Shown here in pieces: positions 25,460-28,053 of a stretch of DNA of 64,000 nt. The DNA is taken from positions 205,431 through 269,430 of the IMG/VR virus record IMGVR_UViG_3300042934_000594. One strand, 5' to 3'. The notes under the pieces were generated by a model, which was not told the DNA's origin, ran no database searches, and saw only the letters and a list, made by a program, of their open reading frames with translations. The stretch's first letter is position 1. The number at the start of each line of letters is the position of its first letter. The translations under genes and the position numbers were made by a program.

Positions 25460-25487
25460 ATTGAAAAGATTTTGAGACCTAAATAAT
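25460..25487 (+). promoter_or_regulatory. early promoter candidate
   Basis: ATTGAAAA-gat-TTTGAGACCTAAATAAT. Confidence 0.5.
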
Positions 25488-26655: not shown

Positions 26656-26694
26656 GGCCTCCCTTCGGGGAGGCCCTATGTTGTCTTTCTTTTT
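26656..26694 (+). terminator. intrinsic terminator
   Basis: GGCCTCCC-TTCG-GGGAGGCC, TATG, T tract. Confidence 0.8.
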
Positions 26695-26695
26695 G

Positions 26696-26723
26696 ATTGC
26701 AAATAATTTGAGACCTATATCCC
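26696..26723 (+). promoter_or_regulatory. early promoter candidate
   Basis: ATTGCAAA-taa-TTTGAGACCTATATCCC. Confidence 0.65.
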
Positions 26724-26776: not shown

Positions 26777-27025
26777 ATGAAACATCTAACTCGCACAACT
26801 GACCTGATCGATTCCGTCTTTGGTTTGTTCACAGGGGTAACTCTCTTGGAACAGATCGGTGACGATCACGTTGAAACGTGCTGGGAGTTATCGAACAACC
26901 CTACCTTTGAAGAAACCAATTGGGGTGATGCCCACGAGCAGTACTTGCAAGAGCATCGCAACCAACTGGAAGAAGAGCTGGTGGAACAACGTCGGGCTTC
27001 TTCGCTTAACCGCTTTAACTATTAA
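26777..27025 (+). CDS. small acidic early protein (monocistronic)
   Basis: GGAG before ATG26777; has its own promoter and terminator. Confidence 0.7.
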   Translation: MKHLTRTTDLIDSVFGLFTGVTLLEQIGDDHVETCWELSNNPTFEETNWGDAHEQYLQEHRNQLEEELVEQRRASSLNRFNY

Positions 27026-27032
27026 ACCCAGA

Positions 27033-27073
27033 CGGCAGTCCTCAGGGGCTGCCGCACTGACTCTTTCTTTTTT
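27033..27073 (+). terminator. intrinsic terminator
   Basis: CGGCAGTCC-TCAG-GGGCTGCCG then a T tract. Confidence 0.7.
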
Positions 27074-27123
27074 GGTAGTGGCACAATGCCACAGGAAAAA
27101 ATACTGACGTTAACTGATATTAT

Positions 27124-27630
27124 GCGAAGTCCGTAGTGGGACGCTGCACGGTGTTAATCCTTGGGTGCTGGCGCTACCGAGTTGATCAACACCAACCTTG
27201 GCGATGTACCCGGTTTGCCATGACGGGGGAGTCGCAAGTTGTGTTTTATGCACAGCCTACAGCACACAGGTGAAACTGATCGGGGGTTTGCCCGTGTGCT
27301 GTGGGATGGGTATCGAACCCTAGACCTATTGAACAAGGAAAACCCCGTATGGGTGTTCTGGCCGCTGCGCTTACTTTACAGGTGATGGTTAGGCTTCTAG
27401 CCATGGATCTGCCTGCTACCGTTCCCCCTGATGCACACTACGTTGATGCTATCGCCTGGCGACACGACTCGCCTGTGCCGTACCTCAATAGCGTACCCGC
27501 GGTTGTTAAGCGGATCAGTACGCGTGTCGGTGTGTATCACCCTCTGGTCCCTCCGTCTGTGCAGGATGGAGTGGGAGGTTGCGCCTTGCTGCACACGCCT
27601 AGGGTGCGTGGCTAGCAGATAGGGCACGAC
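27124..27630 (+). ncRNA. candidate large structured non-coding RNA (~510 nt)
   Basis: No convincing ORF; at least 7 stems with G-U pairs, including long-range 27238-49/27619-30; begins at a TATG. Confidence 0.6.
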
Positions 27631-27649
27631 AACCTTACCAGGAGCGGGT

Positions 27650-27940
27650 ATGCGAATCTTAATCCTCGGTGGTGGTGCGTCATTGGGCCTGGCTTTGCGC
27701 GATGCTCTCCTGGACACAGCGAGACTCTACAAAGACCTGGCGGTGACATTAGCACCATGCATTGAATGCGATTGGACCTTTGTCGAGGGCGTATCGGACA
27801 CTGGGTTATTGACGACTTATAAGCGAACAGCTAAAGCTCGTTGTGGGCGCCAGTATAAGGCACTGGTTGGCCCCCAGACCCAGGGATCGAGATCCCACAC
27901 TACTGAAGGTCCTGCGTCGACCTCAAAAAACCGTACTTAG
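27650..27940 (+). CDS. hypothetical protein
   Basis: AGGAG RBS; followed by a hairpin at 27952-27974. Confidence 0.5.
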   Translation: MRILILGGGASLGLALRDALLDTARLYKDLAVTLAPCIECDWTFVEGVSDTGLLTTYKRTAKARCGRQYKALVGPQTQGSRSHTTEGPASTSKNRT

Positions 27941-28025: not shown

Positions 28026-28053
28026 ATTGCAAAGAGTTTAAAACCTATATGAC
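28026..28053 (+). promoter_or_regulatory. early promoter candidate
   Basis: ATTGCAAA-gag-TTTAAAACCTATATGAC. Confidence 0.65.

What the first reader, a model, noticed from the sequence alone, without database searches (positions are those of the whole stretch)
27124..27630. ~510-nt ornate non-coding RNA candidate
Seen: the region follows a terminator, begins at TATG (27121-24) and has no well-supported ORF in an otherwise gene-dense genome. Stems found by eye: 27150-59/27184-93 (with inner CTTGG/CCGAG), 27256-67/27294-305 (12 bp), 27385-92/27397-404, 27429-38/27530-39 (10 bp) enclosing 27458-73 and 27491-96/27518-23, and 27551-57/27565-71. A 12-bp long-range helix 27238-49/27619-30 closes a ~390-nt domain. 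There is a T-loop-like GGGTATCGAACCC (27308-20) and a possible pseudoknot or alternative pairing GAGTCG 27229-34 / CGACTC 27465-70. The many G-U pairs work only on the plus strand, as expected for an RNA structure. I do not recognise tmRNA, RNase P or group I/II intron cores. Inference: a new large phage ncRNA class (GOLLD/ROOL-like in scale), possibly a scaffold, ribozyme or defence decoy.
Basis: partly seen in the sequence, partly recalled or inferred. Interest (0 to 1): 0.82.

Follow-up and report, generated by a model that had tools for sequence, protein, structure and literature searches.

The report
Structured phage leader RNA plus small gene
The proposed 510-base phage RNA is really two things, a roughly 225-base folded RNA of a family not yet catalogued and an ordinary small protein gene behind it, so it is a modest new RNA motif and not a giant ornate RNA.

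Summary
The window comes from an uncultured phiKZ-like jumbo phage.

**5' part (27124-27348).** This is a real structured RNA on the + strand.
- It folds better than all 200 shuffles (z -3.5).
- It has homologues in four related metagenomic lineages, plus a probable one in a distant 261-kb relative.
- Hairpins P2-P6 keep pairing through many double substitutions: 26 pairs against 9.1±2.3 in shuffles.
- The P3 loop GCCAUG is invariant.
- Its indels are not multiples of three, and relatives carry stops in every frame.
- It starts at a conserved phiKZ-type promoter: an AAWTACT box near -22, then TATG.
- Rfam has no match, and ARAGORN finds no tRNA.

**3' part (27349-27615).** This is an 88-codon gene.
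- It has an AAGGA ribosome site, and the ORF is kept in the four closer lineages.
- Its indels are multiples of three, and differences are biased to third positions.
- Its helices are what chance gives (z -0.22).
- The 12-bp closing helix and the pseudoknot are not supported.

Most likely the RNA is a cis-acting leader controlling translation of two small downstream ORFs. A processed, trans-acting RNA remains a serious rival. It is new as a motif, moderate in size, and known from only five lineages.

The parts
27034..27073 (+). Terminator of the upstream 96-aa gene: GC hairpin 27034-27053, a spacer of about 10 nt, then the T-run 27064-27073
   Evidence: Read from the sequence. The same hairpin + spacer + TTTCTTTTT layout occurs at 26656-26690 and in all relatives. 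The simple scan does not flag it because the T-run starts more than 2 nt after the stem.
27078..27092 (.). Palindrome GTGGCACAATGCCAC between terminator and promoter
   Evidence: It is unique in the window. It is kept with a variable loop in four lineages and is absent from L022. Its function was not tested.
27096..27124 (+). Promoter-like block: AAAAAATACT (27096-27105, about -24) and TATG (27121-27124); predicted start at G27124
   Evidence: GGAA-AA-TACT ... ATA-TATGCGAA is invariant in all five lineages and unique in the window. phiKZ late promoters are TATG with the G as start, and middle promoters carry AAanTTACc near -24 (PMC4666361). The start site is inferred, not measured.
27124..27348 (+). 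Conserved structured RNA (leader), about 225 nt
   Evidence: MFE z -3.5. Homologues were aligned in A2. RNAalifold finds 72 pairs, 15 of them with compensatory change. The covariance model R1 recovers all relatives at 180-268 bits and L022 at 21.8 bits. Pair counts: 94% of cells paired, 26 double-change pairs against 9.1±2.3 in shuffles, and 1-5 in slid controls. There is no Rfam match.
27129..27142 (+). P0: small 5' hairpin, GUCC/GGAC
   Evidence: Present in the window MFE. It is weak in the L013 group. In L022 the aligned segment gives CUG/UAG. Support is tentative.
27150..27193 (+).
   Evidence: 13 pairs, 7 of them with changes on both sides. L022 forms UUUAAGG/CCUUAAA at the same place.
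27201..27235 (+). P3: hairpin whose loop carries the invariant GCCAUG (27217-27222)
   Evidence: The stem sequences differ in every lineage but stay paired, and the loop GCCAUG is invariant in all five lineages.
27238..27256 (+). P4: 7-bp hairpin, GUUGUGU/GCACAGC
   Evidence: Invariant in four lineages. In L022 it reads GUUGUAC/GUGCAGC, with one G-C to A-U swap.
27257..27304 (+).
   Evidence: 13 pairs, 6 of them with changes on both sides. Example: GCACAC/GUGUGC becomes ACGUUC/GAACGU.
27308..27320 (+).
   Evidence: It reads GAGC-AUCAC-GCUC or GAGC-AUCGC-GCUC in relatives, which gives two compensatory pairs. No clear counterpart was found in L022.
27335..27354 (+). Translation start region of ORF1: AAGGA (27335-27339), ATG (27349), and the local hairpin CCCC/GGGU around the start codon
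   Evidence: AAGGA...CCCCGTATGGGT is invariant in four lineages. In the partition function the ribosome site and/or the start codon are mostly paired in every lineage.
27349..27615 (+). ORF1: 88-aa small protein with a hydrophobic N-terminus
   Evidence: It was called as a gene on the source contig. An ORF of 94-99 aa sits at the same place in the four closer lineages. Their indels are multiples of 3. L008 against L018 gives 17 synonymous and 14 non-synonymous codon differences, with differences at codon positions 1/2/3 of 8/9/21. Similarity of the window protein to L008 is weak (24%, E 0.002).
27650..27940 (+). ORF2: 96-aa small protein (MRILILGGG...), same transcription unit
   Evidence: 32% identity to the L008 counterpart, E 4e-8. 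The family alignment is A7. Structure prediction is poor, pLDDT 43.

Best explanation
The region is the front of one transcription unit of a phiKZ-like jumbo phage.

**Inferred course of events.**
1. Transcription by the phage's own non-virion RNA polymerase starts at the G of TATG (27124).
2. The first ~225 nt (27124-27348) fold into a row of hairpins (P0, P2, P3, P4, P5, P6) with conserved loops and junctions.
3. Immediately after come the ribosome site and start codon of an 88-codon gene (27349-27615), then a 96-codon gene (27650-27940).

**Proposed function.** The folded RNA is most likely a cis-acting leader. The start region of ORF1 sits in a local hairpin. The conserved domain, perhaps through its invariant GCCAUG loop, would bind a phage or host factor, or a ligand, that decides whether that start region opens.

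**Shown.** The RNA structure, its strand, its non-coding nature, and the coding nature of ORF1.

**Inferred.** The start site, the cis-regulatory role, and the existence of a bound partner.
For: **Host phage.** The neighbours are phiKZ-type genes: thymidylate kinase and a gp198 homologue.

**Structure.**
- The 231-nt element folds at z -3.5.
- Homologues occur at the same syntenic place in L008/L009, L018, L013/L015/L016 and L014.
- A covariance-model hit lies in L022, E about 1e-5. It sits directly behind the same promoter block and in front of two small ORFs.
- Covariation: 26 pairs with double changes against 9.1±2.3 in shuffles (0 of 500 reach it), and 1-5 in slid controls.
- Many conserved pairs are G-U, so the + strand is the folded one.

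**Non-coding.** Indels are 1-2 nt, and relatives have stops in all three frames.

**Promoter.** The block is invariant and matches the published phiKZ nvRNAP motifs, TATG with G as +1 and AAanTTACc near -24 (PMC4666361).

**Leader role.**
- No T-run terminator lies between the RNA and ORF1.
- The ribosome site lies 15-25 nt after the last hairpin.
- The start region is mostly paired in every lineage.

**ORF1 coding.**
Against: - Only five lineages are known, three of them close to each other. The pair counts were made on an alignment fitted to the model.
- There is no transcript evidence, so the start site and RNA ends are inferred.
- The helix that would join the 5' end to the ribosome site is weak in the window (3 bp) and differs between folding runs. 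No specific switch is demonstrated.
- In L022 the downstream ORFs show no detectable similarity to ORF1 or ORF2. The RNA may therefore matter for its own sake and not for those genes.
- Overall nucleotide identity of the leader (66% window-L008) is no higher than that of neighbouring genes.
Confidence: 0.55

Rival explanations
1. The ~225-nt RNA is a gene product in its own right. It would be cut from the 5' end of the transcript, or be stable after decay of the coding part. It would act in trans, for example as a protein sponge, a decoy for a host defence, or a base-pairing regulator. The downstream ORFs would merely be co-transcribed.
For: - The RNA and its promoter persist in L022, while the downstream ORFs show no detectable similarity there.
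- The invariant loop GCCAUG and conserved junctions suggest recognition by another molecule.
- Five or six hairpins are more than is needed to mask one ribosome site.
- sRNAs derived from 5' UTRs have been reported in 201phi2-1 and phiKZ (PMC11512511).
Against: - There is no terminator or obvious processing signal between the RNA and ORF1.
- The RNA always abuts a ribosome site and an ORF.
- No target or partner was identified.
- There is only one copy in the window.
Confidence: 0.3
2. One reading: one ornate non-coding RNA of about 510 nt (27124-27630), closed by the helix 27238-49/27619-30, comparable to GOLLD or ROOL.
For: All listed arm pairs are complementary. There is no Rfam match.
Against: - The whole region folds at z -1.56 and the 3' half at z -0.22.
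- The 3' half is a conserved ORF with 3n indels and a third-position bias.
- The 5' arm of the closing helix belongs to the conserved local hairpin P4.
- Relatives align with the window's 3' half only as protein, if at all.
Confidence: 0.03
3. A broken or recoded protein gene. Frame 1 is open from about 27115 to 27615 except for TGA-AAC-TGA at 27274-27282. The pieces 27136-27273 and 27301-27615 would then be one gene read through the stops, or a pseudogene.
For: The two pieces share a frame and are separated by only two stops.
Against: - In L008, L018, L013, L014 and L022 the same frame upstream of the ATG carries three or more stops at varying places, and no frame is open throughout.
- Leader indels are 1-2 nt.
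- The substitutions preserve base pairs, not codons.
- Neither piece has a Pfam, PHROG or tblastn match.
- The large protein search, run on the 3' piece only, found just the window's own 88-aa product.
- The two TGA codons lie in the variable part of P5.
Confidence: 0.02
4. A DNA-level element, such as a cluster of protein-binding sites, an origin or a packaging signal. The inverted repeats would act as DNA.
For: The region contains several inverted repeats. There is also a conserved palindrome just upstream at 27078-27092.
Against: - Many conserved pairs are G-U, which would be A-C mismatches on the other strand and are meaningless in duplex DNA.
- Stem sequences change freely while pairing is kept, which is the pattern of single-stranded folding.
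- The element sits between a promoter and a ribosome site on the coding strand.
Confidence: 0.05

Closest known systems
5'-UTR-derived small RNAs of jumbo phages 201phi2-1 and phiKZ (e.g. sRNA005, upstream of gp277/gp182; PMC11512511)
   Same: Both are structured RNA at the 5' end of a phage transcript in nucleus-forming Pseudomonas jumbo phages, conserved between related phages, and of unknown function.
   Different: - The locus differs: here it lies between thymidylate kinase and the gp198 homologue, not upstream of the tail gene.
- Those sRNAs were defined by premature termination. Here no terminator follows the RNA.
- The covariance model finds nothing in the syntenic regions of phiKZ, 201phi2-1, PS119XW, Phabio, Psa21, D6 and Viktualia.
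- No sequence comparison with sRNA005 itself was made.
Riboswitch-like or protein-binding cis-regulatory leaders (general class; from my own knowledge, phage examples include T4 translational operators and riboswitch candidates in cyanophages)
   Same: A conserved multi-hairpin domain lies directly upstream of a ribosome site. Its loops and junctions are invariant, its stems covary, and the start region is paired.
   Different: No ligand or binding protein is known. No expression platform with two alternative folds was demonstrated. It matches none of the 4227 Rfam families.
GOLLD and ROOL large non-coding RNAs
   Same: All are uncatalogued or orphan structured RNAs associated with phages. This one has several hairpins.
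   Different: This RNA is about 225 nt, whereas GOLLD and ROOL are several hundred nucleotides long (from my own knowledge). There is no Rfam match to either. It is attached to an ORF and is not free-standing.
Bacterial RNase P RNA conserved region I (AAAGUCCG)
   Same: The 5' end reads GAAGUCCG, which resembles that motif (resemblance recalled from memory).
   Different: No RNase P model of Rfam matches even at E 10. No P1-P3 precede the motif, and no matching 3' strand with covariation was found. I treat it as coincidence.

Membership tests
Any Rfam 15 family (4227 models, including GOLLD, ROOL, RNase P, tmRNA, group I/II introns and riboswitches) | Score at or above the family's gathering threshold | tested here: not met
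   No match in the whole window at gathering thresholds. At E up to 10 on 27000-27700 the only match is a 12-bit ALIL hit across the promoter. The L022 homologue also has no credible match.
   ARAGORN finds no gene in the window. The loop AUCGA reads AUCAC or AUCGC in relatives, and only the 4-bp stem is kept.
Structured non-coding RNA (generic) | Base pairs kept through compensatory substitutions in independent lineages, beyond controls | tested here: met
   15 of 72 RNAalifold pairs are compensatory. There are 26 double-change pairs against 9.1±2.3 in shuffles, and 1-5 in slid controls. Caveat: only 6 distinct sequences, on a model-fitted alignment.
Structured non-coding RNA (generic) | Absence of a conserved reading frame | tested here: met
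   Relatives have stops in all frames. Indels are 1-2 nt.
Cis-regulatory leader / riboswitch-like element | Lies in the 5' UTR of the regulated gene, on the same strand, with no intervening terminator | tested here: met
   A promoter-like block precedes it and AAGGA plus ATG follow it in the four closer lineages. L022 has a GGAG site and an ATG instead. No hairpin with a T-run lies in between.
Cis-regulatory leader / riboswitch-like element | Two mutually exclusive folds, or a ligand or protein that changes access to the ribosome site | tested here: inconclusive
   The start region is paired in all lineages. The 5' GUCCGUA is complementary to UAUGGGU at the start codon. Both segments are invariant, so covariation cannot test this pairing. 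Binding cannot be tested with these tools.
phiKZ-type nvRNAP promoter | TATG with G as +1; for the middle class, an AAanTTACc-like box near -24 (PMC4666361) | tested here: met
   AAWTACT lies at about -22 to -24, and ATAYTATG is invariant in five lineages. Only the sequence match was tested, not activity.
5'-UTR-derived sRNA of jumbo phages (201phi2-1 type) | A discrete short transcript ending by premature termination | not testable with these tools
   No RNA data exist for this uncultured phage. No terminator-like site lies inside 27124-27348.
Protein-coding gene (ORF1, 27349-27615) | ORF kept in relatives, indels in multiples of three, excess of synonymous and third-position change | tested here: met
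   The ORFs are 88-99 aa in the window and the four closer lineages. Indels are 3, 6, 9 and 12 nt. L008 against L018 gives 17 synonymous and 14 non-synonymous differences, at codon positions 8/9/21. In L022 there is only an ORF at the same position, with no detectable similarity.

The most novel reading that the evidence does not exclude
The 225-nt RNA founds a new class of functional RNA specific to nucleus-forming jumbo phages. It could be a riboswitch or ribozyme-like domain. It could instead be a trans-acting RNA whose invariant GCCAUG loop engages the translation apparatus, a phage protein or a host defence, with the downstream ORFs being incidental.
Probability: 0.15. Interest if true: 0.75.

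Novelty: new variant of a known kind. Interest (0 to 1): 0.45.

Why it matters
Nucleus-forming jumbo phages transcribe with their own polymerases and must send mRNA out of a protein shell, yet little is known about RNA-level control in them. This is a covariation-supported, uncatalogued RNA domain at a fixed genomic position. It is attached to a recognisable phiKZ-type promoter and to two tiny genes, which makes it a concrete and clonable object for studying such control. It also shows how a GC-rich small gene can pass by eye for an 'ornate' RNA. Its reach is limited: it was seen in only five uncultured lineages and was not found in the syntenic region of seven cultured relatives.

Tried and rejected
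**Searches for more homologues.**
- blastn and tblastn against GenBank phages gave nothing relevant, with the region, the leader and both ORF pieces as queries.
- IMG/VR scans with a conserved 18-mer, a P4-P5 pattern, the promoter pattern and a three-anchor core pattern returned only the source contig or chance hits.
- The same three-anchor pattern gave 5 hits in JGI metagenomes and 1 in GTDB genomes. None matches the covariance model at the hit site, even with filters off, so they are chance hits.
- nhmmer with the leader profile found nothing in L002, L003 or L022-L024.
- A profile search with the neighbouring 168-aa protein found L022, which was useful. It also found P0010 and P0011, whose contigs are not syntenic.
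- The search for related loci with the protein alignment failed once and then found only the source contig.

**Other dead ends.**
- The four contigs carrying the identical ORF1 are 100% identical in DNA, so they are uninformative.
- AlphaFold2 on ORF2 gave pLDDT 43, so no fold search was run. The ESM Atlas gave only a Rossmann-like look at the N-terminus, below the level that counts.
- The hhalign comparison of L022 ORF2 with A7 is circular, because A7 contains that sequence, and I discarded it.
- An upstream ORF starting at the invariant AUG of the P3 loop exists in all lineages (10-29 codons). Its frame relative to conserved blocks and its peptide differ (and reading). I therefore did not adopt it as the explanation.
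- I rejected the RNase P-like AAGUCCG and the T-loop reading.

Full report
**Context.** The window is part of IMG/VR contig UViG_3300042934_000594, 269 kb. The gene order is thymidylate kinase, then small ORFs, then a homologue of phiKZ gp198. The best cultured relatives share about 40% amino-acid identity. Together these place it among phiKZ-like, nucleus-forming jumbo phages. There is no DNA-level relative in GenBank phages.

**Checking the observation.**
- The region follows a GC hairpin and T-run (27034-27073) and starts at TATG, 27121-27124.
- The 507 nt as a whole do not fold better than dinucleotide shuffles: z -1.56 on the + strand and -2.07 on the - strand.
- Splitting the region resolves this. 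27124-27354 gives z -3.50, with 0 of 200 shuffles as good. 27355-27630 gives z -0.22, with 85 of 200 as good.
- The helices in the 3' half are therefore what a GC-rich sequence gives by chance.

**Finding relatives.**
- The large protein search with ORF 27301-27615 found only the window's own 88-aa product. The four contigs carrying it are identical in DNA.
- Searching with the neighbouring gp198-like and 168-aa proteins gave syntenic metagenomic contigs: L008/L009, L018, L013/L015/L016 and L014.
- tblastx and blastn of the window against L008 showed nucleotide-level similarity at 27064-27166 and 27235-27261. Between there and 27913 there was no significant similarity.

**The 3' half is a gene.**
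- In every one of these relatives an ORF of 94-99 codons starts at the same conserved AAGGA...CCCCGTATGGGT.
- The window's version is 27349-27615, 88 aa. It is weakly similar to L008: 24% identity, E 0.002.
- Indels in this part are 3, 6, 9 and 12 nt.
- Between L008 and L018 there are 17 synonymous and 14 non-synonymous codon differences. Differences at codon positions 1/2/3 are 8/9/21.
- The next ORF, 27650-27940, also has homologues: 32% identity, E 4e-8.

**The 5' half is a structured RNA.**
- An alignment of 27124-27354 with the relatives (A2) shows invariant blocks. They are GCGAAGUCCGUAGUG at the 5' end, GCCAUG, CAAGUUGUGU, UGCACAGCCUACA and UGUGGGAUG.
- Between these blocks lie segments that differ yet stay complementary.
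- RNAalifold predicts 72 pairs, 15 of them with compensatory change.
- A covariance model (R1) recovers the relatives at 180-268 bits. It also finds a 21.8-bit, full-length match (E about 1e-5) in L022, a 261-kb contig of a more distant relative.
- That L022 match lies directly behind a promoter block nearly identical to the others. It lies in front of a 99-codon ORF that the gene caller missed and an 84-codon ORF.
- Sub-folds of L022 show the same hairpins with different stem sequences and the same GCCAUG loop.
- On the model-based alignment, 94% of cells are paired. 26 pairs have changes on both sides, against 9.1±2.3 in shuffles (0 of 500 reach it) and 1-5 when partners are slid.
- Caveats: there are only six distinct sequences, three lineages are close to each other, and the alignment is fitted to the structure.

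**Helices in window coordinates.**

| Helix | Coordinates | Note |
|---|---|---|
| P0 | 27129-27142 | tentative |
| P3 | 27201-27235 | loop GCCAUG at 27217-27222 |
| P4 | 27238-27256 | |

- A helix joining the 5' end to the ribosome-site region appears in one prediction. It is only 3 bp in the window and is replaced by other pairings in other runs. I do not rely on it.

**Not coding, and on the + strand.**
- Leader indels are 1-2 nt.
- Frame 1 of the window is interrupted only by TGA-AAC-TGA at 27274-27282, which invites a read-through reading. In the relatives, however, the same frame has three or more stops, and no frame is open throughout.
- Neither piece has a Pfam, PHROG or tblastn match.
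- Many conserved pairs are G-U. The minus strand scores only about 16 bits over the P5 part.

**Promoter.**
- GGAA-AA-TACT...ATA-TATGCGAA is invariant in all five lineages and unique in the 64-kb window.
- Published work on phiKZ shows that late promoters are TATG with the G as start. Middle promoters carry AAanTTACc near -24, and some also have TATG (PMC4666361).
- The box here sits at about -22 to -24. The start at G27124 is thus a reasoned inference, not a measurement.

**What it is not.**
- It matches no Rfam family at gathering thresholds, nor at E up to 10 apart from a 12-bit chance match.
- ARAGORN finds no tRNA or tmRNA.
- The long-range helix 27238-49/27619-30 uses the 5' strand and loop of P4.
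- The pseudoknot arm 27229-34 overlaps the 3' strand of P3.
- In both cases the proposed partner lies in or just after the fast-evolving ORF.

**Distribution.**
- Pattern scans of IMG/VR, JGI metagenomes and GTDB genomes returned only the source contig or hits that the model rejects.
- The model finds nothing in the syntenic regions of phiKZ, PS119XW, Phabio, Viktualia, 201phi2-1, Psa21 and D6. Those regions are densely coding.
- Global nucleotide identity of the leader (66% window-L008, 83% L008-L013) is similar to that of neighbouring genes. What marks it as RNA is the pattern of change, not the amount.

**Mechanism.**
- No terminator separates the RNA from ORF1, and the ribosome site follows the last hairpin within 15-25 nt.
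- In every lineage the start region is mostly paired. In four lineages the pairing is GGAUUGCCC/GGGUAUUCU or CCCC/GGGU. In L022 it is AGAUG/CAUCU.
- The simplest reading is a cis-acting leader whose conserved domain binds something that sets translation of the two small ORFs.
- Against this, the downstream ORFs in L022 show no detectable similarity to ORF1 or ORF2, while the RNA persists. That keeps open a processed, trans-acting RNA like the 5'-UTR-derived sRNAs reported in 201phi2-1 and phiKZ (PMC11512511).
- The functions of ORF1 (hydrophobic N-terminus) and ORF2 remain unknown.

**Verdict.** About 225 nt are a new, covariation-supported structured RNA at the head of a jumbo-phage transcript. 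The rest is an ordinary small gene. My estimates:
- Composite anatomy: about 0.85.
- Cis-regulatory role: about 0.45.
- Trans-acting role: about 0.3.

Noticed in passing
L022:2661-2780 (+): A tRNA gene with about 47 extra nucleotides in the anticodon-arm region. Rfam tRNA scores 38.4 bits against a threshold of 29, with 60 nt where the model has 13. ARAGORN does not call it. It may be an intron-containing or disrupted phage tRNA.
   Followed up: partly
window 26697-26720, 28027-28050, 25461-25484 (+): The motif TTGCAAA-N3-TTT-N-A-N-ACCTATAT recurs in front of small-gene units. There are 3 copies within 3 mismatches against 0.01 expected. It is probably another promoter class of this phage, perhaps early.
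   Followed up: partly
window 26656-26690 and 27034-27073; L008:3930-3975 and equivalents: Terminators here share an unusual layout: a GC hairpin, a spacer of about 10 nt, then TTTCTTTTT. The simple terminator scan therefore misses the one at 27034-27073 and flags only parts of the one at 26656-26690.
   Followed up: no
window 27078-27092: The palindrome GTGGCACAATGCCAC lies between terminator and promoter. It is kept with a variable loop in four lineages and is missing in L022. It could be an operator or a second terminator hairpin.
   Followed up: no
window 27220-27276 and equivalents: The invariant AUG in the P3 loop opens a short ORF in every lineage (17, 24, 29 and 10 codons). The peptides and frames are not conserved. 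It could be a leader peptide or a start-codon mimic.
   Followed up: partly
window 27650-27940: The N-terminus of ORF2 (MRILILGGGASLG) looks like the first strand and glycine loop of Rossmann-fold enzymes. Atlas hits are at most 0.91, the protein is only 96 aa, and it models poorly at pLDDT 43.
   Followed up: partly
L008:4480-4560, L013:3320-3400 and equivalents: In the relatives, but not in the window, the last ~60 nt of ORF1 and the ORF2 start region are nearly identical between lineages and contain a hairpin (CGAGU...ACUCG). The L008 ORF1 region folds at z -2.4.
   Followed up: no
window 27127-27133: The 5' end GAAGUCCG resembles conserved region I of RNase P RNA (resemblance from memory). 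No RNase P model matches.
   Followed up: partly
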